This document shows, piece after piece, positions 3,225 to 39,425 of a stretch of DNA of 64,000 nucleotides; within the stretch, counting starts at the first letter, position 1, and every line of letters starts with the position of its first letter. The position numbers and the translations under genes are program-made. Below the pieces are notes generated by a model. That model was given only the letters and a program-made list of their open reading frames with translations, was not told the DNA's origin and did not search any database. Source of the stretch: Octopus sinensis (lineage: Eukaryota); the NCBI RefSeq assembly GCF_006345805.1, contig NC_043005.1, positions 1,612,001 through 1,676,000 on the forward strand. The letters run 5' to 3'.

Positions 3225-3570
3225 TATGTATGTATGTATGTATGTATGTATGTATGTATGTATGTATGTATGTGTGTATGTATGTATGTATGTATGTATG
3301 TATGTGTGTATGTATGTATGTATGTGTGTGTATGTATGTATGTGTGTATGTATGTGTGTATGTATGTATGTATGTGTGTATGTATGTATGTATGTGTGTA
3401 TGTATGTGTGTATGTATGTATGTATGTATGTGTGTATGTATGTATGTATGTATGTGTGTATGTATGTATGTGTGTATGTATGTATGTATGTATGTGTGTA
3501 TGTATGTATGTATGTATGTGTGTATGTATGTATGTATGTATGTATGTGTATTCATGCATACATGCATGTA
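3225..3570. repeat. (TATG)n/(TG)n compound microsatellite
   Basis: Direct reading. Similar arrays at 9600-9900, 12810-13055, 25500-25615, 28048-28435 and 34690-35390. Confidence 0.98.
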
Positions 3571-4830: not shown

Positions 4831-5383
4831 GTGCTTCAGGTTTGAAACAAGTTTGCAACCTTATACAAACAATATGCAAGCAGTTAGAAAACATCTTGTC
4901 TGACTAAAGTGTATGGTTTTTACATTCAAATGTCATGCATAATTGCATAATAAATTGCTGAGATCATAAATGAACATTTAAATTTTAGCTCAGGTGTGCA
5001 ATTAAGACAAGGGGGAAATGATTCTACAAATAAATACCACTGCTATGGTTGGGGAAGAGAAACTAAAATTTACACCCTGCCCCCACATCACAATCATATA
5101 GGCAAATGCCAACATCCATTATCTACATCACAATCATATAGGCAAATGCCAACATCCATTATCTACATAAAAAAACTAAACTCCAAAGAGAGATCCCTAC
5201 ACTGACACAATTAAAACTAACAAAATCTATCTCAAATCACAGCCTACTGATTTAAAGGGAAGAGGACATCAGATAGAAGTAAAAAAAAAAGTGGCATCTT
5301 TGATCATAGTGTTGTTCAATAAGAGGAATTCTTGGGGGCTAAACAATAAACAAATTAATAAATAAAACAATATCTAAACTTAC

Positions 5384-5562
5384 TTTTACTCCATCAGTTG
5401 AATGTAAATGATCTTTCAGCTGTTTGGCAGCATTGAGATGCCGGTCTCTATCACTCTCCTTGAGCAGACGTCGCATCACCTGGGAGAGTCGAGAGTCACC
5501 TGTAAAACTTTTCATAGAGTCTTCTTGCAGTTTCCTCTCATTTCTTGTCAATAGAGAAAGAG
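5384..5562 (-). CDS. SMG1: Exon of serine/threonine-protein kinase SMG1 (PIKK family, NMD), N-terminal region
   Basis: Encodes ...TRNERKLQEDSMKSFTGDSRLSQVMRRLLKESDRDRHLNAAKQLKDHLHSTDGVK, which aligns to human SMG1 as I recall it (TKDMRKSQERSMSYSDESRLSNLLRRITREDDRDRRLATVKQLKEFIQQPENK). Canonical GTAAGT donor after 5384 (phase 0). Two phase-1 acceptors: ttttacAG (exon starts 5499) or aaaaccAG (exon starts 5562). In-frame TAA at 5572-5570. Confidence 0.85.
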
Positions 5563-5574
5563 CTGGTTTTTAAC

Positions 5575-8361
5575 CTACATCCAAGACTCCTTAAATGGAT
5601 ATTATCAGCCTCGTGTATACAAACTCGGTCAAGAGATGCACTTCAACACTTGATGGTTAAAAGATGTTGCTGAAAGGATATGATATGACATTCAAAGGCA
5701 TTTTGAATCGATGCTAAGCCTCTGCCACTTTGCTTTCGTTTTAGGTAGAGGCGGTCTACGTCACTGTTTATGTGGAAATTATGCGTGCTTGTTAGTATTT
5801 TCCGGGTTTTCACATCAACGGCTCGGATTTCATCAGGTGTCCAATCAAGTAGACCAAATGTACTGGCACAGTATGCACACTGTGGGCTACTGTTTTATTG
5901 AATGCAGAGAGTTCTGAGGTCGAAATTTTCTTTATTCGGTTGTAATACTCATCAGTGACACGTATTTTGTTACAGGTGCCATTGTAAGATATGTTTTCAT
6001 CCACCCCCAGATACCTGTAACATTCCTCGTCAGATACCGAGAAAACAGTCAAATCGTTGATGGAGATGTTATTAGTCTGGTTTACCGTTTTCTCCATTTT
6101 CACAACCATATAACATCATTTATCCCGACCAAACTCCAACCCTACATCCTTTGAAAATGTTGTAACTAGGTCAAGGCTCTTTTTCATCTCATGCATATTC
6201 TTTGCATAAAGTTTTAAGTCAACCAAAAAGAAGCAGTGCGTCCTTTTGGTATATTTGTTTCCTTGTGAATCAGTGAGATATCCTTCAGACTTCCTTAACA
6301 TGAATGACAAGGGGTTTACAGAAAGTATAAACAACATTACAGAGAGGCTGTCTCCTTGGAATATGCCTTTGCTATATTGTATACTATTGGTGATAATACA
6401 GTCACTCCTTGTGCTTCAAGATAGTGGTCCACGATGAAGTCAGGTCAGCTATGGCTTTGACTATGATCACTGGAACTTTAGCAAGACGAAGGGCTTCTAG
6501 CATCCATGAGTGGGGAACAGAGTCAAAGGCTTTCTTGCAGTCTTGCCACATTGAAACTTGGTTCCTTCTGTGCTCTCGTACCTCTGACATCACAGTTTTG
6601 TTGATTAACAATTGCTCGGCACATCCCCAAGCTCCCTTCTTCCCAGCAGCTTGTTCTGCTGTGATAATGTTATTGGTTTCACAATTGTACTGGAGGAAGA
6701 GCTTTAAACATGCTGTATGTATCTTATATATTAAGTTCTGGCATGCAGTTGGCCGGTAGATTTTTGCCATGTGGGTAGTTTTGCATTTGAGGATCAATTT
6801 CGTCTCTGCCAGAGCTAACCAGTGTGGTATGCTACAGTTCCCATTGAGAGCTTGCTGGTACAGATCGATAAGATAGGGTCGGTAGAATGTTAGTTTCTCG
6901 AACCAATATCCAATAATCAAGTCTCTTCCAGGTGGTTTTCCATCTTGAAGGTTTTGAATCACAGTTGCAAGGGTATCACCATCGATGCTTGGGTGTAACA
7001 CAGGAGTAATAACTTCTTTGGATTTCTTCCAGACGCAGAGCATCTTGGTTAAACTCCTTCTCTTCACTCTAGATTTTCCTCCAGAAGAAGTCTATGTCTT
7101 CTTGTGAAGGAGCTTCTGTGATGTTCACTGCCCCCCCCCCTCATATACTGCTTCCAGGTTATGGTTGAATTTTTTGCTCATTGTTCTTCTCTCGGTTATT
7201 CTCTGCTGATGTCGGGGTTTCTCACCGACAGCTTTTAGCTCCTGCTTGAGAGTAATCAGTTTGCAAGTGAGTGTCCTCTTTTTGCTGTCTCCAGACACCA
7301 TTTCCATCTCCTTCTTTACTCTCTGTCGGTCGGACGTTTAGTGATTTGCTTGTTTGCATGCAATAAGCATCATTTCTGATGGTCTTCCATAAACCATTTA
7401 TCTTTTTCTCCGTCTTCAGAACCCATGATGGTGTTTTCTTTGTTGTTTTGTTCTCGTTTACCTTTTTAATGCAAAGCTCTACATGAATATAAACAGTATA
7501 GAGCAGATAGACAGGAGTTAATCTGCCAGAATGTGGGTTCACCACTCTGTTGTGAATACTCATCACCAATTCCGTTAACAGCTTTTTATACCGTATCTGG
7601 TGGGTTTGTTTTTTACTTACTTTGGTAGAGAATACTCTCTCCTCGAAGGAGTCCTTCAAAGCCAAAGTTATTTTTTCTCGGAAAATTTCAGTAAGGACAT
7701 ATTTCACCGGCATATAATCTTGACTACTACTACTACTACTACTACTACAATAATCGTTGTGGTTGTGCCTGCTATTTACCCTAATCTTAGTTGGGGGGAC
7801 AGTGGTCAGTTACTTGAGCCAGTAATGTAGTTTGGCTGGCTGGCATTATGGAATCTACTGGAATGTCGATAACTGCGAAACCACGTGGTGATCTTATGTC
7901 AGCCACGTTTACGTTTTTGTTTATAGAGTTGGGAACGAGATTAATTTTCGATTTTTTAATAAAGTTACAGTTAGTTACAAACCTTCTTTCAATGTTCTAC
8001 AAATGCTGCTTCTTGGCGTAGTTGCTTCGCAGTAAAATGGTTTAATTCTGGATGAAGATCGTCCCAATATGATTTCTATCTTTCATACAGCCAACAGAGG
8101 GGTTTTGTTTCGCCTTTTCGCAGCAGTTAAATAGATCGTTATTCAATTCATAATTCCAAAAGAAACGAGTTTTGTAGTTACGGTTTCGGCGATCTTAGGT
8201 TTGTAGTAGCACGTTTTCATCGATGATTTCTGTAAAAAACTATTATTTTTTTACATATGGGCTTGCGGGAACATTTCAAGTAATGAGAGCGAAAGAGACT
8301 AAGAGGAAGCGATTTTATGACAAGGGAATTTCTTTAGAAGTTACCGAAGCATTGATGTACA

Positions 8362-8392
<31 letters not shown>

Positions 8393-9283
8393 GTGTGTTT
8401 GATGGAGTGTGGGAGACAGACAGTATGTTGTGTAAGTGAAGTGCTTCTGTTAGTGTGTGTGAAGAGACAGAGAGAGTAATGTGTGAAAGAGAGAGATAAC
8501 TGAAATTTTTTACTCGGTATGTGTATATGTATGTATGCATGTATGTGTGTGTGTGTGTAAGTATGTGTGTGTGTATGTATGTATGTATGTGTGTATGTCT
8601 GAATGTATGTGTGTGTGTAAGTATGTATGTGTGTATGTATGTATGTATGGCCGATTCAGTGTAATTATTTACTCGGTGTATGTGTATATGTATGTCTGAA
8701 TGTATGTGTGTGTGTGTATGTGTGTATGTATGTATGTATGGCCGATTCAGTGTAATTATTTACACGGTGTATGTGTATATGTATGTCTGAATGTATGTGT
8801 GTGTGTGTGTATGTGTGTATGTATGTATGTATGGCCGATTCAGTGTACACTGAATCGGCCATACATACATACATACATACATACATACATACATACATAC
8901 ATACATACACACATACACACATACACACACACATACTTACACACACACACATACATAGATACATACACACACACATACATGCAGACATACATATACACAT
9001 ACACCGAGTAAATAATTACACTGAATCGACCATACATACATACATACACACACACATACATAGATACATACACACATACATAGATACATACACACATACA
9101 TACACACACACATACTTACACACACACACACACACATACATGCATACATATACACACACCGAGTAAAAAATTTCAGTTATCTCTCTCTTTCACACATTAC
9201 TCTCTCTGTCTCTTCACACACACTAACAGAAGCACTTCACTTACACAACATACTGTCTGTCTCCCACACTCCATCAAACACAC

Positions 9284-9314
<31 letters not shown>

Positions 9315-9600
9315 TGTACATCAATGCTTCTGTAACTTCAAAAGAAATTCCCTCGTCATAAAATCGCTTCCTCTTAGTCTCTTTCGCTCTCATTACTTCA
9401 AATGTTCCCGCAAGCCCATATGTAAAAAAATAAAAGATTTTACGGAAATCATCGACGGAAACGTGCTACTACAAACGAAAGATCGCCACGGTTTCTTCTA
9501 TAACTACAGCTAGAAAGAATTTGTTTACCTGTTCAGCTGTTTTTGTTCCGTTCTTCGATTGTGTTGTTGATGTGTCCAGCCCTGTTGTTTGTAGTAACTT
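5575..9600 (-). mobile_element. Decayed R4/Dong-clade LINE, 5' region through RT, 3' RLE missing, interrupted by the 8188-9487 element
   Basis: N-terminal RRNRNYKTRFFWNYELNNDLFNC / YWDDLHPELNHFTAKQLRQ; RT motifs KPPGRDLIIGYW, YRPTACQN, EQAAGKKGAWGCAEQLLINK, WQDCKKAFDSVPH, YRYLG, DVDRLYLKR..GRGL. Many stops and frameshifts. Confidence 0.85.
8188..9487. mobile_element. Non-autonomous foldback DNA transposon, Merlin-like; 1.3-kb spacerless palindrome
   Basis: Termini GGCGATCTT...AAGATCGCC; perfect 8-bp TSD ACGGTTTC at 8180-8187 and 9488-9495; arms reverse-complementary to the centre ccgattcagtgTAcactgaatcgg (about 8835-8858). Removing the element and one TSD restores the LINE frame CSYRRNRNYKTRFFW. 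Confidence 0.9.
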
Positions 9601-9904
9601 TTATGTGTGTATGTATGTATGTATGTATGTGTGTATATGTATGTATGTGTGTATGTGTGTGTATGTATGTGTGTATGTGTGTATGTATGTATGTATGTAT
9701 GTATGTATGTATGTATGTATGTATGTATGTATGTATGTATGTATGTGTGTATGTATGTATGTATGTGTATATGTATGTATGTGTGTATGCATGTATGTGT
9801 GTATGTGTGTGTATATGTATGCATGTATGTATGTATGTATGTATGTATGTATGTATGTATGTATGTATGTATGTGTGTGTATGTATGTATGTATGTATGT
9901 ACAG

Positions 9905-10139: not shown

Positions 10140-11365
10140 CATCGTTTTCTGTTTATTCTAACTTGTAAAGGTTTATATTTCTTATTAATTGGCATTTTTA
10201 TTTTTCAGATTCTATATGTGACTGTTTAATGATGCCATAAACAAAAGAAACCTCAGAACTGTCTGAATTTCAAAGAGGCCATATTGTGGGTCATTCTCAA
10301 GGTTGATATCGTCAGCGTAAAATCTTAGCAGAAAACCTTAGGATCCTGCTTTCTACAGTTAATAGAGTGATTGTGCAATTCACCAGAGAGGGGAAAGAAT
10401 CCACATCACCTTGTCCAGATTAACCAGGGCCCTATGACAAGACCTTTCTCTTTGCTAAGGGAAGTGTGGAGGATAATCCTTGTTGCAAGACCTCTGACAT
10501 AACAGAGCAAATTGATGTCAGTCCCAGAACAGCTGTCAGGTATCTCCACAAACTTGGTTACTACGGCAGAGCAAGAAGAAGGAAGCCACATCTTTGACCA
10601 GCCAATATGAAGCAGAGAAAAGATATGGCCAGTGAGATGGTGGAGAGGCCATTAGCATTTTGGGACACTGTCATGTTCTCTGATGAGTCCATGATTTGCT
10701 GTATTTCCTAGCAGTGGTTGTGTGTGGGTCTGGAGACTCTGTGATCAAGAATTTGATGTGAAAAGATTGCAACCAGCAATGGAACACGGCAGCTATTCTG
10801 TGATGGAATGGGGAACAATTTGGAGAAATGGTTGATCAGAGCTGGTGGAGTGTGAGGGAAAGATAAACTCAAATAAATATGTGTCCATATTGCAGAAAGG
10901 ACTCCTTCCAAACTTCTCCAGTGGTGAAATGATTAAAGAAGACTCTTTATTTGTGGAAGATGGGATTCCTTGTCACACGGTAAAAATGACCCAAGATTTG
11001 TCAGAAAAGAATGGCATTAGAAAGCTTCCAAAGCTAAGCCAGTCACCAGATATGAACCCTATAGAACAACACCTCTTGGGTATAATGGACAGGACATTTC
11101 ATAAACAGAACAAGAAAGCATCTTCAAAGCCAGATCTTTTGAGATTTTTGCATGAAACTTGGCAAGAAATTCCACAAGAGAATATTCATCATCTGATCAG
11201 TAACATGCCTAATAGGGAGGGTCCTTGGATTGAAAGGCAAAGAGCATGTCTACTAAATATTAAATGTTCACATTATAACAACAAATAATTTGAATGTATA
11301 ATTTCAGATTTAAATAAATTTTAATAAATATAAGGGTGTTTATTTACTTTTTACATGTCTGTGTA
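10140..11365 (+). mobile_element. Tc1-family DNA transposon with pseudogenised transposase
   Basis: SELSEFQRGHIVG (paired-like HTH), WDTVMFSDES, EDGIPCH, SQSPDMNPIEQH. The 3' TIR at about 11336-11365 matches the 5' TIR of the 27563 copy. Confidence 0.85.
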
Positions 11366-11389: not shown

Positions 11390-12805
11390 AATATACTATT
11401 CAGGGTACAAGTAGGGGTTCACCAAGGATCAGTCCTCAGCCCCTCTTGTTCATCATAATCCTCCAGACAATAACAGAGGAATTTAAGTCAGGCTTCCCCC
11501 TGGGAGTGACCTTGTTTTTATAGTTGATTTACTAGCAGAACTAGAGAAAGAATTCTAGGTGTGTAGACAAGGTCTAGAATCAAAGGGCCTTAGAGTTGAT
11601 TCAGTGAAAAACTAAAGTTTTAATGAGTAGGAAGGTGGACAAGTCACAAATCCCTTCTCAATATGTAGAAAAGGCATAGGCAGAAATTGCATAAGGTGTG
11701 CCTGGTGCAAGCTTTGGATGCATAAGAGGTGCAGCAATATCAGAGGAAGGTTAACGGGGATAACAGTCTTTGTGTGTGGCAGATGTCCAGGTACAATAAA
11801 CACTAGGAATGTACAGAAAACAGACTCCATCAAATGCCAGTGGAGATACCTAGAAGTAGTTGATAGCTTCCATTATCTAGGTGACCAAGTTAGCAGTGGA
11901 GGTGGGTGCTCTGAGAGAGTAGCTGCAAGAATAAGAATAAGCTGGGCAAAGTTCAAAGAGCTTCTACTTCTGTTGGTAACAAAAGGCCTCTCCATCAAAA
12001 TGAAAGGCAGACTGTATGTTACCTGTGTGTGAACAGCCATGCTTCTTGGCAAGGCTTGAAAGAAATGAAGCTTGTAAGCTTTATTAGATGTGCAATATCA
12101 GTGTGCATGTAAAAACATAGTGTAAATGTCTTGAGATGTGGTGTTCAAGAAAGATGAATGCACTGGCATGGTCAGGTGATGCATATGGACGAGGACAGCT
12201 GTGTGAAGACTTGCCAATCTCTAACTGTGGAGGGAAACTGTGGAAGAGGTAGACCCAGGAAGATATGGGATGAGGTGGTGCAGCATGACCTCCAAATGTT
12301 AGACCCCACAGAGGTGACCAAGACCTTTGGCAATCTGCTGAGCTTGAGAAAACTTGTCAAACCAAGTGAAACCGTAATCAGTGTCATGTAAATGGCACTC
12401 ACGAAATTCTAATCATGGCCATTGCTGGTAGCATGTTCTTTGAATGTTTCATGGAGGGGGAAAAAGAAGTGGTAAGGCAAGAATCTCAAACGTTGGGTCT
12501 CATGGAAGTGACAGCAAGTTGCCAAACCCTTTGGCAATATGCTGAGCTTGAGAAGACTCATCAAACCAAGTGAATCCTTCATTGTGGCCATTGCTAGTGT
12601 CATGGAAGTGGCAAACATTCTGGTGGCACATAAGCAGCACCCCATTACACTCACGGAGTGGTTGGTGTTAGGAAGGGCATCCAGCTGTAGAGACCCTGCC
12701 AAATTCAGATCGGAGTCAGGTGCGACTCCCTGGTTTAACAGTTTTCAGTCAAACTAACCCATGCCAGCATGGAAAGTGGATATTAAATAATGATGATAAT
12801 GATGT
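11390..12805 (+). mobile_element. 5'-truncated RTE LINE (RT C-half, PHD-like insert, 3' UTR)
   Basis: GVHQGSVLSP, LEVVDSFHYLGD, GRGRPRKIW, (TGA)n tail. Confidence 0.9.
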
Positions 12806-13299
12806 ATGACTGTGTGTATGTATGTGTATGTATGTATGTATGTATGTATTCATGCATGTATGTATGTATGTATGTATGTATGTATGTATGTATGTATGTA
12901 TGTATGTGTGTGTATGTATGTGTATGTATGTATGTGTGTATGTATGTATGTGTGTATGTATGTGTGTATGCATGTGTATGTATGTATATGTGTATGCATG
13001 TGTATGTATGTATGTGAATATGTATGTGTGTTTGTATGTATGTATGTATGTATATATAATGTTTTTGGATTAGTACCCGATGCAACACAAAATCCTACCC
13101 ATAACGAACAGTTGCAGGATGAGTCAAAATGATTATTGTATTAAACAAAAACTAATGCCAAATCTATTTTCTGTTTCCTTCATCAATTATCATCATCATC
13201 ATCATCATCATCATCATTATCATTAATACAGAAAGGATTGAGGTAAATCCTCCTGAAGATATACAGTCAAATTTAAAAGAAGAGTGCCATTATCATCTT

Positions 13300-16315: not shown

Positions 16316-19300
16316 TCATCATCATCATCAACATTGTTTAACGTCCGTTTTCCCTGCTGGTATGGGTTGGATGGTTTGACTGAAGACTGGCAAGCCAGTA
16401 GACTGCACCGGGCTCCAATCTGATCTGGCAGAGTTTCTACAGCTGGATGCCCTTCCTAACACCAACCACTCCTAGAGTGTAGTGCAGCATTGGCATCGGC
16501 CACATTCGGATGGTGCTTTTTACCTGCCACCTGCACAGGTGTCAATCAGGCAGCACTGACCATGACTACAGTTTCAATTTCACTTGATTTAAGAGGTCTT
16601 CTCAAGCACATCATATCGCGTAATGATTCAAGGGTACTTTTAAATGTGCTGATTATGTGATACTGAGATTAGCCATGGCTGCGATCTCACTTTACTTGCT
16701 GGGTCTTCTCAAACTCAGCATATCTCCAAAGGTCATGGTCTCTTGTCATTGCCTCTGTGAGGCCCAATGTTTGAAGGTCATGCTTCACCACCTCATCCCA
16801 TGTCTTCCTGGGTCTACCTCTTCTACAGGTTCCCTCCACAGTTAGGCTGTGGCACTTCCTCACACAGCTGTCCTCACCCATACATAGCACATGACCATAC
16901 CAGCTCAGTCATCTCTCTTGCACACCACATCTGATGCTTCTTATGTCCAACATTTTTTCTCAGGATGCTTACACTCTGTTGTGTATGCACACTGACATTA
17001 TACATCCAGTGAAGCATACTAGCTTCATTTCTTTCAAGCCTATGCATATCCTCAACTGTCACAGCCCATGTTTCACTGCCATGTAGCATGGCTCTTTATA
17101 CACATGCATCATACAGTCTACCTTTCATTCTGAGTGAGAAGACCTTTGTTACCAGCAGAGGTAGGAGCTTTCTGAACTTTTCCCAGGCCATTCTTATTCT
17201 AGCAGCTATGCTCTCAGAGCATCCACTCCAGCTACAGACTTGGTCACCTAGGTAGTGGAAGCTATCAACTACTTCTAGTTTTTTCCCCTGACATGTGATG
17301 GAATCTGTTTTCTGTACATCTTCAGTGTTTATTGCCCCTGTGCATCTGCCACACACAAAAACTATCTTCCTGGTTAACCTTCCTTTCATATTGCTGCACC
17401 TCTTATGTGTCCATAGCTTGCACCAGGTACATCTTATGGAGTTTCTACTTACACCATTTCTACAGATCAAGCAGGGCCATCTACCTGAAAGCATTTGTGA
17501 TTTGTCTACCTTCCTACTTATTAAGAATTTGGTATTTGCTAGATTGACTCTTAGGCCCTTTGATTCTAGACCTTGCTTCCATACCTGAAACTTCATCTCT
17601 AGTTCTGGTAGTGACTCAGCTATTAGAGCAAAGTCATCAGCATGAGGAGCTCTCAGGGGCAGCCTGTCTTTAATCTCTGTTATTACCTGCAGGACTATGA
17701 TGAACAATGGGGGCTGAGGACTGATCCTTGGTGGACCCCTATGTCTACCTGAAATTCTTCATCATACTCATTGCCAACCCTCGCCTTACTGACAGCATCC
17801 CTGTACAGGGTTTATACAGCTCTTACCAACCACTCATCTATCCCTAGTTTCTGCATTGACCACCAGATAAGGGATCTGGAGACCCTGTCAAAGGCTTTCT
17901 CAAAGTCAACAAAAGCCAAGTACAGAGGTTTATCTTTGACTATGTATTTCTCCCGCAGTTGCCTCACTAGAAATATAGCATCAGTGGTGCTTCTACCTGG
18001 CACAAAACCAAACTGCATCTCATCTAGACTGACTCTTTCCCTAATTAGTTGGGCTATGACCCTCTCCGTGACCTTCATTACCTGATCCAGCAATTTGATA
18101 CCTCTGTAGTTATTTCTATCTAAAGCATCACCCTTACCCTTGTAGCAGTTGACTATGGTGCTGCTACACCAGTCATTGGGTATGACTCCTTCATGAACTC
18201 CCTGATTTACGATGTTGGTGACAAGACCATAACCCACACTGTCCGATATTTTAAGCATCCTAGCAGTGATTCCTGATAGGCCAGGTGCTTTCCCTGTCTT
18301 CATATTCTTAATTGCTTTATCTACCAGGGTACTGTCAATTTGGATCTCTGGTCTCTCAATTGGGTCAACATTTGACAGACTCTCCTCCTCTCATTCATTC
18401 TCCACATTCAGTAGTCTTTCATAATAGCATCTTTAAGCCTCTTTCTTTTCATCCATGCAGACACATTTTTCTCTTATGGCATCAAAATTTTCTCTCATAC
18501 ACTATTTTGCAATCCTTCAATTCTGTGGTTCTCATGTTGCTGAACATTGGCAAACTTCTTTTCTGCTTCTCCCTTGGCTATATATACCTGTCTTCTAGCT
18601 TCCCTTCTGGCTAACTGATACATTTCCCTGCTGCCTCCACTCTTCCAGGCCTTCCAAAGCTTGTTTCTTAGCTCTAATGGCCCTGTCTACAGTATTGTTC
18701 CACCACCACGTTACTCTAGGTCTGGAAGGGATTTGCATCAACCACAGATTTGGTCTGTGGTGCTCAGCAAGCTGTCTCACAGGAATTCTCAGTTGCCCTC
18801 TCTGTCACAAGTGTGTAGCTCCTCCTCCCTCTCATCAAATTTCTCAGTGAGAATGTCCCTAAATCTCTGACCATGTGAAGGTATCTTAAGCTTCCAAATC
18901 CTTCTTTTCCAGATCGGTCTGCTTCTTGGCATTCTTCTGGCCTGGAGTCTAAAGTCACTAATGACTAGTCTATGCTGGGGGGTACATTCTTCATCAGGGA
19001 AGGTCATTGTTTTTAAGAGCAACCCTGCATCCTGCTGTCTGATGAGGATGAAATCCATCTGGCTTGCAGAGTCACCTGATTGATAGGTTATCAGGTGGCT
19101 GGCTGGCTTCCTGAAGTTGGCATTGCAGATCAATTGTTGCTTGCATGACAGAACTCCAGTAGCCTAGTTCCCCTTCGTTTCGGAAACAAATTCCAAGCCC
19201 CACCCCCATGAACACCATAGAAGATACCAGGTTGCCGTCTGACATACCCATTCAAGTCTCCAGCCACAAAGATGAAGTCATTGTCGCTAATCTTTGAGGT

Positions 19301-28047: not shown

Positions 28048-28779
28048 ATGTATGTATGTATGTATGTTTGTGTGTATGTATGTATGTTTGTGTGTATGTA
28101 TGTATGTTTGTGTGTATGTATGTATGTATGTATGTATGTATGTATGTGTGTGTGTATGCTTGCATGTATGCATGTATGCATGTATGTATGTATGCATCTA
28201 TGTGTATGTATGTATGTATATATGTACGTATGTGTGTGTGTATGTATGTATGTATGTATGTGTGTATGTATGTATGTATGTATGTATGTATGTATGTATG
28301 TGTGTATGTATGTATGTGTATGTATGTATGTATGTATGTATGTATGTATGTATGTGTGTATGTATGTATGTATGTGTGTGTGTATGTATGTATGTGTGTA
28401 TGTGTGTGTGTATTTATGCATGCATATATGTATGCATTTCAGAAGCAGCATTCCAATTTCTCTCAGAACCAAACTGAAATCTTGTCTGACACAGAATGAT
28501 TGAATATTGAACGTAAAATGCAAAGGGTCAACATCTCACTGTATTCACACGGCAGGTTCTGATGAAATATCAGGCTGCTCTTTTCATTTAAATGTGATTT
28601 AATGCACAATGCATGCACCCTGTAAGAACACTTATATTTTACAGATGAGAATTTGAGCAAAGGTGAGGATTTAATCAATGGACAACAACACCTGTGTAAC
28701 AAATGAAGTTTGGTGACAGAGATGCAAGGCTGACCAGACTCACCTCAACTTGTTGCTAATCTCCAGATTTGCTGAAGAC

Positions 28780-33150: not shown

Positions 33151-34568
33151 ATATCATCATCATCATCATTTAACGTCTGTTGTCCATGCTGGAATTGACC
33201 ATGGCTGGCATGCTGGAAGGCTGTACCAGACTCCAGTCTGATTTGGCATGGTTTCTATGGCTGGACACCCTTCCTTACACTCATTCCACTCCAAGAGTGT
33301 AATGAGTGCTTTATGTGCCACCAGCACATGCGTCATTTGCGTGACACCAGTAATTAGTCATGACTGTGATTTCACTTGGCTTGATGGGTCTTCCTCTCAA
33401 GCACGACATAAGGCCAAAGGTTTTGGTCATTTGTCATTGCCTCCATGAGGCCCAACACTCGTTTCTGTGAGGCCCAATGTCAAAAAGGTGCTCTTTACGT
33501 GCCACTGGCACATGTGCCAGTTACCTGACACTGGCATTGGCCACGACTACGATTTCACTTGTCTTGATGGGTCTTCTCAAGCACGGTACATTGCCAAAGA
33601 CCTTGGTCACCAGTCATTGCCTCTGTGAGGCTCAAAGTTCGAAGATCATGCTTGACTACCTCATCCCATGTCTTCCTGGGTCTATCTCTACCACAGGTTC
33701 CCTCCACAGTTAGAGATTGGCACTTCTTTACACAGCTGTCCTCGTCCATATGCATCACCTGATTATACTAGTGCAGTTGTCTCTCTTGCACACCACACCT
33801 GATTCTGCTTATGCCAATCTTTTCTCTCAAGATGCTTACACTGACATTGCACATCCAGTGAAGCATGCTAGCTTCACTTCTATCAAGCCTACACAAGTCT
33901 TTAGCAGTCACAGCCCATGTTTCACTGCTGTTTAGCATAGCTGTTTACACACAGGCATCATACAGTCTGCCTTTCACTCTGAGGGAGAAGCCTTTTGTTA
34001 CCAACAAAGGTAAGATCTCTCTGAACTTTGCTCAGCTTATTCTTATTCTTACAGTTATGCTCTCAGAGCATCCACCTCTGCTACTAACTTGGTCACCTAG
34101 GTAATGGAAGCTATCACCTACCTCTAGCTTACCCACCTGGCAGTTGATGGGGTTTATTTTCTGTACATCTTCAGTGTTTATTGCCTCTGTGCATCTGCCA
34201 CACACAAAAACTATTTTCCCAGTTAACCTTCCTCTAATATTGCTGCACCTCTTGTGTGTGCATAGCTTGCATCAGGTATATCTTATGGAGTTTCTACCAA
34301 TGCCTGTCCTACAAATTGAGAAGGGCAATCTACCTTAAGGTATTTGTGATTTTTCTGCTCTCCTACTTACTAAGACTTTGGTTTTTGCTAGATTAGCTCT
34401 AAAGTCCTTTGATTCAAGACTTTGCCTCCATGCCTGAAATTTCTTCTCTATTTCAGGTAGTGATTTGGCCATGAGGACAAGGCCATCAGCATAGAGGAGC
34501 TCCCAGGGACAACCTGTCTTGAATTTGTCTATTATTGCCTGGAGGACAATGATGGACAAGAGGGGGGT
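33150..34568 (-). mobile_element. 5'-truncated RTE LINE
   Basis: CPWELLYADGLVL, PHD-like Cys cluster, GRDRPRKTW, 3' UTR and tail. Confidence 0.88.
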
Positions 34569-36699
34569 GCTACAGGACACTGTTACTTGTCTCAGGGTTA
34601 AACACATTACTTAGCTGGACAATTTCTTGTGTTGGAGTGACAGAAATGTCTTTCATTTGTTTAACAACCTAATGTCTGTCTGTCTGTCTGTATGTATGTA
34701 TGTATGTATGTATGTATGTATGTATGTATGTATGTATGTATGTATGTATGTATGTATGTATGTATGTATGTATGCATGTATGCATGTATGTATGTATGTC
34801 TCTATGTATGTATGTATGTATGTATGTATGTATGTATGTATGCATGTATGCATGTATGTATGTATGTATGTATGTATGTATGTGTGTATGTATGTATGTA
34901 GTATGTATGTATGTATGTATGTAGTATGTATGTATGCATGTATGCATGTATGATGTATGTATGTATGTATGTTGTATGTATGTATGTATGTATGTATGTA
35001 TGCATGTATGTATGTGTGTATGTATGTATGTATGTGTGTATGTATGTATGTATGTATGTATGTATGTATGCATGTATGCATGTATGTATGTATGTATGTA
35101 TGTATGTATGTATGTATGTATGTATGCATGTATGCATGTATGTATGTATGTCTCTATGTATGTATGTATGTATGTATGTATGTATGTATGTATGCATGTA
35201 TGTATGTCTCTATGTATGTATGTATGTATGTATGTATGTATGTATGTATGCATGTATGTATGCATGTATGTATGTTTGTATGTATATATGTATGTATGTA
35301 TGCATGTATGTATGTGTGTATGTATGTATGTATGTATGCATGTATGTATGTATGTATGTATGTGTGTATGTATGTGTGTATGTGTGTGTGTTTTTGAGTA
35401 AGTGTTTATATTAATGCTAATAACTGGTGTTGGCTGGCAACTTTCAGTGAAAGGAATTATTCAATCCTGGAATTGTTTGGTCCTCTCTTTTATAGACCTC
35501 AGAGGGGTGAAATCTGGAGTTGGCTCTGGTTGGAACTGAACTCAGAATGTAAAGAGGCAGAATGATAATGCTAATGAATGCTAATGAATGCTAATAATAA
35601 AGGCTAATTATAAAAGATTGCCATTAGTGAATAATGAATAGTTTAAGACATTCTAGAAATATAATTTAAAGAAAGAAGAGAAAATATTCTTTAAAAGAAT
35701 TAGAAAGAAATTTAGAAAAGAGAAAAAAAAATTAGAATTTTGGAGGTGAAAATGTTCTGAGTTCAAAAGGAAGGTCACACATTTCTTTGAAGGAAAAAAT
35801 ATAACAACAGAAGTTTAATTTGTAAGTAATTACTGATCAAACTATATTTAATTAGTAATTAGCTATGGGAAGCACTTAACTTAATTGGAAGGGATGTAAT
35901 CTTCATTATTAAGAGTTTATTTTATTTTATTTTAGCATTTATTTGTTTCTGTTTAGTGATTTGTTAAAGAGCCCAGAGTAATGAATAATGAATTACATTT
36001 GTTGCTGTCTAAGCCAGAGGCTCGAGTCCTGCTACAGGACACTGTTACTTGTCTCAGGGTTAAACACATTACTTAGCTGGACAACTTATTGTGTTGGAGT
36101 GACACACAAATGCCTTTCATTTGTTTAACGACTTTAATTACTGACAATAGGAAGTAATTGCATCTAATCTGTGGTTCCTGCAAATTATTGACAAAGTTGA
36201 CTTTGCCTTTCATTTTTCTGGGATTGTTAGTGAAAGTACCAGTAATATATTTGGGTAATTCAATTTGTTTCACATTTGCCCCACAAATTTATAATTCTGT
36301 ACAATATAAGAAGTAATTGTCATTAATATTGTAATTGTTATCTAAATGTAATGATTACAAAATCTGGTATAGCACCGGTCAAGACAGACAAGAATTGTAA
36401 TACTCAGTTTCACATCTCTAGGTTATGAGTTCAAATCTCACTAAGGTCAACTTTGCTTTTTATCCTTCGTGAATTGGTCAAATAAATAATAAATAACAAG
36501 AACTAACGATGATCCAATCAATTATGTTCTCTTGCAAAATGCCTGGCCTTTCATCTGTGCCCCCCCCCACTTCTTTTTATATAAATATTATTGAAAATGT
36601 TGCTACTGTTGTTAATATCCTGCTAGAAATCGTTGTTGTTGTTGTTAATTGTCAAAACCTGGCATCAAGAATGTCTCACTTGTTCACAGAAGTAATGTG

Positions 36700-38084: not shown

Positions 38085-39425
38085 AAACTGTTCAAAGGAA
38101 TGCTAACTGGGAAGATAGTTTTTGTATGCGGCAGATGCTCAGGAGCAATAAACACTGAAAATGCGCAGAGAACAACTTCCGCCACATTCCAGGGAGGAAA
38201 ACTAGAAGTAGTTGATAGCTTCCATTACCAAGGTGACCAAGTCAGTAGCGGGGAAGGGTGCGCTGAAAGTGTAGCTGCTAGAATAAGAATAGCTTGGGCA
38301 AAAATCAAAGAGCTCTTACCTCTGCTGGCGACAAAGGGCCTCTCGCTCAGAGTAAAAGGTAGACTGTATGACGCTTGTGTACAAACAGCCATGCTACATG
38401 GCAGTGACATATGGGCTGTGACTGCTGAGGACATGCATAAGCTCACAAGGAATGAAGCCAGTATGCTCCGATGGATATGTAATGTCAATGTGCATACTCG
38501 ACAGCGTGTAGGTACCTTGAGAGAAATGTTGGACCGAAGAAGCATCAGATGTGGTGTGCAAAAGAGATGACTGTGCTGGTATGGTCATGTGGTGAGAATG
38601 GATGAGGATAACTGTGTGAAAAAGCATCACACCCTAGCGGTTGAGGGAAACTGTAGAAGAGGTAGACTCAGGAAGGCCTGGGATGAGGTAGTGATGCACG
38701 ACCTTCGAACTTTAGGCCTCACCAAGGAAATGACTAGTAACCAAGACTTTTGGAAATATGCCGTGCGTGAGAAGACCCAGTAAGCCAAGTGAGACCATAA
38801 TCTCGTGGCCTATGCCAAGGGTGTAACAAGCCCACTTATGTGTACCTTTTCCTTCTTTGGACACTAAACTCTGCTTGCGAAGACCTGTTTAGGCAAGTGA
38901 AATTAAAATCAAATTTGATGACTGATATCCATGCTAGCTGGGTGCAAAGAGCACCATACGAGCGTGATCGTTGACAGAGCGGCTAACCAGCTTCCATGCC
39001 GGTGGCACATAAAAGGCACCATTCGAGCATGATCATTACCAGCGTTGCCTTACTGGCACTCGAGCCCCGTGCTAGTAGGATATTAAGAGCACCATCCGAG
39101 CGTGATCGTTGCCAGAGTGGCTATCTGGCTTCTGTGCCAGTGGCATGTAAAAGACACCATTCGAGCGTGATTGTTATCAGTATCGCCTTATTGGCACCTC
39201 TGCTGGTGGCATGTGTAAAAGATTCGAGCGTGGTCATTACCAGTACCGCCTGACTGGCACGTAAAAGCACCCACTACACTCACGGAGTGGTTGGCGTTAG
39301 GAAGGGCATCCAGCTGTAGAAACTCTGCCAGATCAGGATTGAAGCCTGGTGCAGCCATCTGGTTTGCCAGTCCTCAGTCATTGGTCCATCCCATGCTAGC
39401 ATGGAAAGCGGACGATGATGATGTT
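38085..39425 (+). mobile_element. 5'-truncated RTE LINE with repeated 3' UTR units
   Basis: VFVCGRC, LEVVDSFHYQGD, RGRLRKAW, 3' UTR and (TGA)n tail. Confidence 0.88.

What the first reader, a model, noticed from the sequence alone, without database searches (positions are those of the whole stretch)
8180..9495. 1.3-kb spacerless palindrome with 8-bp TSD: modular Merlin-like foldback element
Seen: arms 8188-8846 and 8847-9487 are reverse complements with no spacer. Termini are GGCGATCTT, the ACGGTTTC duplication is perfect, and excision restores the host LINE reading frame. The interior is built from ~90-bp modules (microsatellite plus atggccgattcagtgtaattatttactcgg), unequal in number between arms. 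Arm mismatches cluster in the outer ~70 bp while inner unique sequence is nearly identical, which may reflect arm-to-arm conversion. Established: GG termini with 8-9-bp TSDs typify Merlin/IS1016; modular arms typify foldback elements; coleoids have very high ADAR editing of dsRNA. Inference: a cruciform-prone element 2.6 kb upstream of the SMG1 exon that would give a ~650-bp dsRNA if it lies in SMG1 pre-mRNA.
Basis: partly seen in the sequence, partly recalled or inferred. Interest (0 to 1): 0.75.

Follow-up and report, generated by a model that had tools for sequence, protein, structure and literature searches.

The report
Palindromic foldback transposon, octopus SMG1 locus
This is a real but probably dead copy of a non-coding "foldback" DNA transposon, a 1.3-kb near-palindrome with an 8-bp target duplication, and shorter relatives are scattered through the Octopus vulgaris genome; it is an ordinary kind of mobile element, and the "Merlin" label is plausible but unproven.

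Summary
Window 8188-9487 is a spacerless inverted repeat with arms of 659 and 641 nt. The arms match at 90% overall and 96% over the outer 333 bp. The core is a perfect 62-bp palindrome centred on TGTACA. The termini are GGCGATCTT and the flanking duplication ACGGTTTC is perfect.

It is a mobile-element insertion, not an assembly artefact. The arms differ by substitutions, indels and module number. Five related copies of 300-417 bp with the same termini lie in 55.6 kb of O. vulgaris chromosome OX597841.1. Two have perfect 8-bp duplications, one confirmed by a paralogous empty site, and one has a 7/8 match.

All O. vulgaris copies share one internal deletion, so they form an amplified deletion-derivative subfamily. 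The element encodes nothing.

The superfamily is unresolved. A GG terminus plus an 8-bp duplication fits Merlin.

The outer clustering of arm mismatches is family-wide and partly CpG decay, so arm-to-arm conversion is not needed. Three subterminal TTTC(C)GT motifs are all mutated in the left arm, so this copy is probably immobile. The "restores the LINE frame" claim could not be verified. SMG1 lies on the minus strand, and an intronic position is likely but unproven.

The parts
8180..8187 (.). Left copy of the 8-bp target-site duplication, ACGGTTTC
   Evidence: Read directly from the sequence. Identical to 9488-9495.
8188..8846 (+). Left arm, 659 nt, terminus GGCGATCTTAGG. This is the more decayed arm.
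   Evidence: Arm alignment. Polarised against O. vulgaris copies, 9 of 14 arm differences are derived in this arm.
8195..8233 (+). Left-arm positions of the three subterminal motifs, all mutated here (TTAGGT, TTTTCAT, TTTCTGT)
   Evidence: The motif TTTC(C)GT has no match in the first 100 nt of the left arm.
8188..8520 (+). Unique outer part of the left arm, containing a (GT)n(GC)4(GT)n run at about 8361-8399
   Evidence: blastn against the right arm 9487-9158 gives 96.4% over 331 nt.
8584..8847 (+). Array of 91-bp modules, each a TG/TGTA microsatellite plus ATGGCCGATTCAGTGTAATTATTTACWCGG. There are 2.9 copies, and the last is cut at the symmetry axis.
   Evidence: Tandem Repeats Finder: period 91, 93% matches, score 436. 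Motif positions 8653, 8744 and 8837.
8816..8877 (.). Perfect 62-bp palindromic core (31+31), axis TGTACA at 8844-8849. This is the most cruciform-prone part.
8847..9487 (-). Right arm, 641 nt, terminus GGCGATCTTTCG when read from 9487 on the minus strand. It is closer to the family consensus. It holds one full module at 9003-9032 and a (CATA)n-rich interior at 8860-9150.
9442..9480 (-). Three direct subterminal TTTC(C)GT motifs at arm positions 8-13, 27-33 and 40-46, proposed as transposase-binding sites
   Evidence: three in 46 nt against a background of 0.009 per 50 nt per strand in the window. They are conserved in all O. vulgaris copies. The binding role is inferred.
9488..9495 (.). Right copy of the target-site duplication, ACGGTTTC
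5810..7091 (-). Context: reverse-transcriptase domain of a decayed LINE, the presumed host of the insertion
   Evidence: Pfam RVT_1, E = 1.5e-17. The stretch between it and the insertion site has no detectable homology.
5339..5569 (-). Context: open frame holding an SMG1 exon, with GTAAGT donor at 5383-5378 and a likely acceptor near 5535
   Evidence: phmmer against PDB 6l53_A SMG1 residues 127-180, E = 6.2e-7. Sequence read.

Best explanation
Window 8188-9487 is one insertion of a non-autonomous class II 'foldback' transposon. It consists only of two long inverted arms. Each arm has a unique part of about 333 bp followed by microsatellite and 91-bp modules.

Proposed mechanism (inferred):
- A transposase supplied in trans recognised the GGCGATC termini and, probably, three subterminal TTTC(C)GT motifs.
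- It cut the target with an 8-bp stagger and inserted the element, leaving the ACGGTTTC duplication.
- The site is a decayed stretch next to a LINE remnant, on the 5' side (SMG1 sense) of an early SMG1 exon.

Family: it is shared with Octopus vulgaris. There a derivative with one internal deletion (short arm 1-97, long arm about 355 to 1) has been amplified.

Origin of the long arms (inferred): tandem duplication of the 91-bp module, microsatellite growth, and an inverted duplication whose axis (TGTACA) cuts a module.

State of this copy (inferred): probably no longer mobile, because all three motifs and the TCG of the left terminus are mutated.

Enzyme: the most likely superfamily is Merlin (GG terminus, 8-bp TSD). 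I give that about 0.35-0.4. It is not shown.
For: Shown:
- Palindrome, termini and perfect TSD.
- No coding capacity: Pfam finds nothing in the four longest frames or in P0001.
- The only protein-database hit of an arm frame is P0001, an annotated 'hypothetical predicted protein' of O. vulgaris, found by all three searches. Its locus carries related copies.
- Walking that chromosome gave 55.6 kb with five copies, all with termini GGCRATCTTTCG.
- TSDs of those copies: A has GTATTATT (8/8). D has GATGTATT (8/8), and a paralogous hAT remnant shows the empty site with a single GATGTATT. E has TCATATTC/TCAAATTC (7/8).
- All five share the same junction after arm position 97, and copies A-D share the short-arm GGCG versus long-arm GGCA terminal difference (copy E has GGCG at both ends). 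They therefore descend from one master and spread by transposition.
- TTTC(C)GT occurs three times in 46 nt of the right arm (background 0.009 per 50 nt) and in every O. vulgaris copy. It does not occur in the left arm.
- Literature: Merlin has a conserved terminal 5'-GG, 8-9 bp TSDs and TIRs of 24-462 bp (PMC8101967). Merlin transposase genes exist in octopus: a frameshifted DDE_Tnp_IS1595 copy at L001:19350-20244, E = 1.8e-14, and an O. bimaculoides ISXO2-like protein, P0093.
Against: - No partner encoding a transposase between these termini was found. The nearby Merlin pseudogene shares no terminal sequence and has no recognisable TIRs. Intact Merlin homologues on Logan contigs share nothing with the arms. 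The window has no Merlin remnant.
- Copy B has no TSD. A paralogue shows 15 bp missing at its site. Copy C carries an extra 47-bp copy of its flank.
- An 8-bp TSD also fits hAT, P and the lower range of Mutator, and most described foldbacks are assigned to Mutator (PMC4079207).
- The binding role of the motifs and the immobility of this copy are inferences.
Confidence: 0.85

Rival explanations
1. The family is mobilised by a Mutator/Phantom-type (MULE) transposase, like most described foldback elements such as Drosophila FB, Tm1 and probably Tetris.
For: Structural class: long composite arms with internal tandem repeats. Published foldbacks with 8-10 bp TSDs are assigned to Mutator (PMC4079207, PMC3169594). 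The O. vulgaris repeat annotation lists 21 Mutator families (PMC13282606).
Against: All four scorable insertions have exactly 8 bp, whereas MULE/Phantom families centre on 9 bp. No MULE gene was seen in the 64-kb window or in 55.6 kb of O. vulgaris sequence, though these were not searched for one systematically.
Confidence: 0.2
2. The family is a hAT-derived non-autonomous element.
For: A strict 8-bp TSD is the hAT hallmark. Two O. vulgaris copies (B and D) lie inside remnants of a hAT element: Dimer_Tnp_hAT, E = 2e-4.
Against: In both cases the hAT remnant is the target, not the body. The element's termini point away from the hAT sequence, and paralogous copies show the uninterrupted hAT sequence. 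The GGCGA terminus does not fit the hAT YARNG consensus (my own knowledge of the family).
Confidence: 0.1
3. The perfect fold-back is secondary. A short-arm/long-arm element like the O. vulgaris copies inserted, and the short arm was later rebuilt in place by fold-back or hairpin-templated synthesis from the long arm. The inner arm sequence would then be younger than the termini.
For: All five O. vulgaris copies are asymmetric. The symmetry axis TGTACA cuts a 91-bp module that elsewhere continues TGTAATTA. Inner unique sequence shows 1 difference in 163 nt against 11 in the outer 170 nt.
Against: The same outer-greater-than-inner gradient is seen between this element and O. vulgaris copy B. 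Scaling by that ratio predicts about 3 inner differences against 1 observed, which is not significant. One deletion derives the O. vulgaris form from a symmetric ancestor more simply. The step in divergence lies near position 160, not at the O. vulgaris junction at 97.
Confidence: 0.2
4. Assembly artefact: a chimeric fold-back read produced a false palindrome.
For: Spacerless palindromes are a known artefact of long-read libraries (my own knowledge). The microsatellite interior is hard to assemble.
Against: The arms differ by 12 substitutions and by indels in the unique part, and by one whole module. Both flanks continue as one sequence with a perfect 8-bp duplication. The same termini bound elements in an independent O. 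vulgaris assembly. No other spacerless palindrome exists in the window.
Confidence: 0.03
5. The element has been taken over by the host. Transcribed within SMG1 pre-mRNA, its hairpin of about 640 bp acts as an ADAR substrate or small-RNA source that affects SMG1 expression.
For: Predicted RNA hairpin of -1034.5 kcal/mol. The SMG1 exon lies 2.6 kb downstream in the SMG1 sense, and its conserved coding sequence begins before any ATG, so an upstream exon and an intronic position are likely. Coleoids edit dsRNA heavily (established knowledge).
Against: There is no expression, editing or conservation evidence. The copy shows neutral decay, including CpG loss and an asymmetric arm. Rfam gives only sub-threshold microsatellite hairpin matches.
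Confidence: 0.05

Closest known systems
Foldback elements of animals: Drosophila FB, Tetris of D. virilis (PMC4079207), Tm1 of root-knot nematodes (PMC3169594)
   Same: The element consists almost entirely of two long inverted arms. The arms combine a unique terminal domain with internal tandem repeats whose number differs between arms and copies. It is non-coding, has short MITE-like derivatives, and has a TSD in the 8-10 bp range.
   Different: The TSD here is exactly 8 bp in 4 of 4 scorable insertions, against mostly 9 bp in FB and Tm1. There is no spacer or middle domain at all. The tandem units are microsatellite plus a 30-nt unique motif. No MULE/Phantom partner is known for it.
Merlin superfamily (IS1595/IS1016-related) and its non-autonomous derivatives
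   Same: Terminal 5'-GG, 8-bp TSD and long TIRs (published range 24-462 bp). Merlin transposase genes are present in octopus genomes.
   Different: No transposase partner sharing the termini was found. Arms of 641-659 nt with modular interiors exceed the published TIR range, and I found no foldback family assigned to Merlin in the papers read.
Galileo (P superfamily foldback of Drosophila buzzatii)
   Same: It shows that the foldback shape arises independently in different superfamilies by TIR elongation. Tandem repeats inside its arms carry extra transposase-binding sites (cited in PMC4079207), which parallels the repeated TTTC(C)GT motif here.
   Different: Galileo has 7-bp TSDs, CA-type termini and autonomous copies encoding a P-like transposase (my own knowledge).
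MITEs (miniature inverted-repeat elements)
   Same: The O. vulgaris relatives are 300-417 bp, non-coding, TIR-bounded and TSD-flanked. They are dense (5 in 55.6 kb) and derive from one internally deleted master.
   Different: The window copy is 1.3 kb and fully palindromic, which is outside the usual MITE size and shape.

Membership tests
Foldback-type non-autonomous DNA transposon (structural class) | Two long inverted arms make up most or all of the element | tested here: met
   Arms of 659 and 641 nt with no spacer, 90% complementary.
Foldback-type non-autonomous DNA transposon (structural class) | Arms are composite, with internal tandem subrepeats variable in number | tested here: met
   91-bp modules, 2.9 copies in the left arm against 1.5 in the right, plus microsatellites.
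Foldback-type non-autonomous DNA transposon (structural class) | Target-site duplication and multiple copies at independent sites (mobility) | tested here: met
   8-bp TSD here. Copies A, D and E in O. vulgaris have 8-bp TSDs, and D has a paralogous empty site. Copy number in the window's own genome was not testable.
Merlin superfamily | Encodes, or shares termini with an element that encodes, a DDE_Tnp_IS1595 transposase | tested here: inconclusive
   No ORF in the element. The Merlin pseudogene at L001:19350-20244 shares no termini. Logan Merlin contigs share no arm sequence. No Merlin in the window. A genome-wide search was impossible.
Merlin superfamily | Conserved terminal 5'-GG | tested here: met
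   GGCGATC or GGCAATC at all 12 termini examined. Definition from PMC8101967.
Merlin superfamily | 8- or 9-bp TSD | tested here: met
   8 bp in 4 of 5 independent insertions (window, A, D, E/C). Copy B has none.
hAT superfamily | 8-bp TSD | tested here: met
   As above.
hAT superfamily | Short TIRs with a YARNG terminus, and a partner with hAT transposase | tested here: not met
   The terminus is GGCGA. The hAT remnants beside copies B and D are insertion targets, shown by paralogous uninterrupted copies. The YARNG consensus is from my own knowledge.
Mutator/Phantom foldbacks | TSD typically 9 bp (range 8-10), and a MULE transposase partner | tested here: inconclusive
   TSDs are all 8 bp, the lower edge of the range (PMC3169594). 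No partner search was possible.
MITE | Small size (under about 800 bp), non-coding, TIR plus TSD, many copies | tested here: not met
   The window copy is 1300 bp. The O. vulgaris relatives (300-417 bp, 5 in 55.6 kb) do meet it.

The most novel reading that the evidence does not exclude
The family is a Merlin-mobilised foldback, a shape so far tied to the Mutator/Phantom and P superfamilies. Its arms would be built and remodelled by fold-back template switching at a TGTACA micro-palindrome and by in-place flipping between the arms. The SMG1-intron copy would supply a dsRNA of about 640 bp to the coleoid ADAR machinery.
Probability: 0.15. Interest if true: 0.5.

Novelty: new member of a known kind. 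Interest (0 to 1): 0.3.

Why it matters
- It adds a characterised foldback/MITE family to octopus genomes, with defined termini, TSD length, candidate binding motifs and a deletion-derivative subfamily. About two thirds of the octopus genome is repeats, and many TIR families are unclassified (PMC13282606).
- If the partner proves to be Merlin, that would broaden the set of superfamilies known to produce foldbacks.
- A 62-bp perfect palindrome inside a 1.3-kb inverted repeat is a potential fragile site. If it is transcribed with SMG1, it is a long dsRNA substrate.
- At least one annotated O. vulgaris 'hypothetical protein' (P0001) is a spurious frame across such an element.

Tried and rejected
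The tools were then declared shut.

**Searches that found nothing**
- Exact-pattern scans found nothing in metagenome contigs (two scans) or genome contigs.
- blastn and pattern search found no second copy in the window.
- Two further protein-route searches for more copies returned only P0001: a chimeric 172-aa query and a full HMMER scan of 1.84 billion representatives.
- Three diagnostic sequence strings appear in no paper.

**The Merlin partner test**
- The Merlin pseudogene next to the O. vulgaris copies was used to fetch homologues and their contigs.
- Neither those contigs nor the pseudogene's flanks share the element's termini. The result is inconclusive rather than negative.

**The LINE-frame claim**
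- Pfam and PDB searches of the empty-site translation found nothing.
- No paralogous empty site exists in the window or in the O. vulgaris loci.

**Readings rejected**
- The Rfam hits (mir-297, mir-466, mir-5014 and similar) are all far below their gathering scores and are microsatellite hairpins.
- I first read the inverted flanks of copy B as a sign of hairpin-mediated insertion. A paralogue shows that the inverted repeat pre-exists in the target.
- I first read the 55-bp flank repeat of copy C as a long TSD. The paralogous copy E shows an ordinary 8-bp TSD at that site.
Full report
**1. Observation**

The sequence at 8180-9495 is as described.
- Arms 8188-8846 and 8847-9487 are reverse complements without a spacer. 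A gapped global alignment of the left arm with the reverse complement of the right arm gives 598 identical columns out of 662.
- The outer 333 nt, which are not repetitive, are 96.4% identical.
- The centre is a perfect 31+31 bp palindrome at 8816-8877 with axis TGTACA.
- The termini read GGCGATCTT on both arms.
- ACGGTTTC flanks the element at 8180-8187 and 9488-9495.
- A 26-nt terminal pattern occurs only at the two ends in 64 kb, with 0.00 expected in shuffles.
- No other spacerless palindrome exists in the window.

The interior is modular.
- Tandem Repeats Finder reports a 91-bp unit, 2.9 copies, at 8584-8847.
- The unique motif GGCCGATTCAGTGTAATTATTTAC occurs twice in full plus a central half in the left arm. 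It occurs once in full plus a central half in the right arm.

**2. It is a mobile element, not an artefact**

The arms differ by 12 substitutions and a few indels in the unique part, and by a whole module. That is not what a chimeric fold-back read would give.

- A frame that reads outward through the right arm was searched against the protein collection. It hit one protein, P0001, a 100-aa 'Hypothetical predicted protein' of Octopus vulgaris.
- The locus of P0001 on chromosome OX597841.1 holds related elements.
- I walked along the chromosome with the neighbouring called genes. This gave 55.6 kb carrying five copies of 300-417 bp, all bounded by GGCRATCTTTCG...CGAAAGATYGCC.

| Copy | TSD or flank state |
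|---|---|
| A | GTATTATT, 8/8 |
| D | GATGTATT, 8/8; a paralogous copy of the same hAT remnant shows the unoccupied site with a single GATGTATT |
| E | TCATATTC / TCAAATTC, 7/8 |
| C | Segmental-duplication paralogue of E at the same site, plus an extra 47-bp copy of its flank |
| B | No TSD; the paralogue shows 15 bp missing at its site |

Counting the window copy, four of five independent insertions have an 8-bp duplication.

**3. Family structure**

- All five O. vulgaris copies have the same architecture. A short arm (positions 1-97) joins directly to a remnant of the central microsatellite and then to a long arm (about 355 to 1).
- Copies A-D also share a terminal difference, GGCG on the short arm and GGCA on the long arm; copy E has GGCG at both ends.
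- They therefore descend from one master that had suffered a single internal deletion. They form an amplified deletion-derivative, MITE-like subfamily.
- One deletion converts a symmetric palindrome like the window copy into this form, so the symmetric form is the simpler ancestor (inference).
- The symmetry axis of the window copy cuts a 91-bp module at TGTA|CA, where complete modules continue TGTAATTA. This is the signature expected if the palindrome arose by an inverted duplication at a micro-palindrome (inference).

**4. The mismatch gradient**

- The same gradient separates the window element from O. vulgaris copy B. Identity is 89.6% at positions 1-100, 92.9% at 101-170 and 97.4% at 215-333.
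- About five of the differences hit CpG sites, which are twice as frequent in the outer part.
- Scaling by the family-wide ratio predicts about three inner differences against one observed, which is not significant.
- Arm-to-arm conversion is therefore not required.
- Polarised with the O. vulgaris copies, 9 changes are derived in the left arm and 3-4 in the right. Either the left arm has decayed faster, or the arms already differed in the source copy.

**5. Candidate recognition sites**

- The first 46 nt of the right arm carry TTTC(C)GT three times in direct orientation. The background in the window is 0.009 per 50 nt per strand.
- All O. vulgaris copies keep the three motifs.
- In the left arm of the window copy all three are mutated, to TTAGGT, TTTTCAT and TTTCTGT.
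- If these are transposase-binding sites, as subterminal repeats are in other families, this copy can no longer be mobilised (inference).

**6. Which transposase?**

- The element has no coding capacity.
- Published Merlin features are a conserved terminal 5'-GG, 8-9 bp TSDs and TIRs of 24-462 bp (PMC8101967). The first two are met here.
- Merlin is present in octopus. A frameshifted DDE_Tnp_IS1595 pseudogene lies 7.5 kb from copy B (E = 1.8e-14). An O. bimaculoides ISXO2-like protein appeared among the homologues.
- That pseudogene shares no terminal sequence with the family and has no recognisable TIRs.
- Intact homologues on Logan contigs share nothing with the arms.
- None of 120 Merlin proteins hits the window.
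- Foldback elements described so far are mostly assigned to Mutator/Phantom (TSD 8-10 bp, mostly 9) or, for Galileo, to P (PMC4079207, PMC3169594).
- hAT also makes 8-bp TSDs. The hAT remnants next to copies B and D are targets, not partners, and the terminus does not fit the hAT consensus.
- My estimates are about 0.35-0.4 for Merlin, 0.2 for Mutator/Phantom and 0.1 for hAT, with the rest for other or unknown superfamilies.

**7. Context**

- The SMG1 exon is at 5339-5569 on the minus strand. It aligns to human SMG1 residues 127-180 at E = 6e-7 and has a GTAAGT donor.
- The element therefore lies 2.6 kb on the 5' side of this exon in the SMG1 sense.
- The conserved coding sequence starts before any in-frame ATG, and a good acceptor precedes it. 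An upstream exon is expected, so an intronic position is likely, but I could not locate that exon.
- As RNA the element folds into a single hairpin of about 640 bp, -1034.5 kcal/mol.
- Rfam gives only sub-threshold microsatellite hairpin matches.
- The LINE claim is only partly borne out. An RVT_1 domain lies at 5810-7091 on the minus strand, and an open frame of about 60 codons crosses the reconstructed empty site. That frame has no detectable homology, and no paralogous empty site was found.

**8. Verdict**

This is a real, well-bounded, probably dead copy of a non-autonomous foldback DNA transposon. Its family is shared with O. vulgaris. It is a new member of a known kind.

The Merlin assignment is a reasonable lead that remains untested. 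The functional ideas (cruciform fragility, an ADAR substrate in SMG1 pre-mRNA) are untested and conditional on transcription.

Noticed in passing
L010:7127-7541 (copy E) versus L001:1723-2022 (copy C): The two copies sit at the same position in paralogous flanks that are 94-95% identical (a segmental duplication in a zinc-finger gene cluster). Their interiors are in opposite orientation, and C also has an extra 47-bp copy of its left flank and an internal deletion. The simplest reading is an in-place flip by recombination between the element's own inverted arms.
   Followed up: partly
L001:11411-11814 (copy B) and L007:14084-14500 (copy D): B and D inserted independently, in opposite orientations and about 57 bp apart in homologous coordinates, into two paralogous copies of a hAT remnant of roughly 770 bp. 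This may be a local insertion hotspot. B has no TSD, and 15 bp (TTCATTTAAATGCTT) present in the paralogue are missing at its site.
   Followed up: partly
L001:10001-10303 (P0001): The annotated O. vulgaris 'Hypothetical predicted protein' of 100 aa is an open frame running through the long arm of copy A into its flank. It has no Pfam domain and no homologue in 1.84 billion representatives, so it is almost certainly a spurious gene call.
   Followed up: yes
L001:19350-20244: A frameshifted Merlin (DDE_Tnp_IS1595, E = 1.8e-14) transposase pseudogene with an N-terminal CxxC zinc-ribbon-like stretch. No recognisable TIRs. Its closest intact relatives (65-66% aa identity) are on Logan contigs from runs SRR11869381-94, of unknown organism.
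   Followed up: partly
L001:18960-19075: A short run of telomere-like repeats (TTAGGG and variants) flanked by a small imperfect inverted repeat, just upstream of the Merlin pseudogene.
   Followed up: no
window 10836-11288 (+): A Tc1/mariner-type transposase remnant (Pfam DDE_3, E = 7e-4, below the curated cutoff), 1.3 kb from the foldback.
   Followed up: partly
window 11652-12314 and 16752-17476; 33545-34233 and 38096-38802: Pairs of inverted repeats 76-83% complementary and 4-5 kb apart. The first pair looks like RTE-type LINE 3' ends in opposite orientation (frames with RGRPRK...W..V..DL motifs).
   Followed up: no
window 9602-9901 and many other sites (for example 3240-3530, 12790-13070, 28050-28390, 34690-35370): Long (TGTA)n/(TG)n arrays of the same type as the element's interior are frequent in the window. 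One starts only 105 bp from the element's right end. These arrays cause the many low-level inverted-repeat matches and the miRNA-like Rfam hits.
   Followed up: partly
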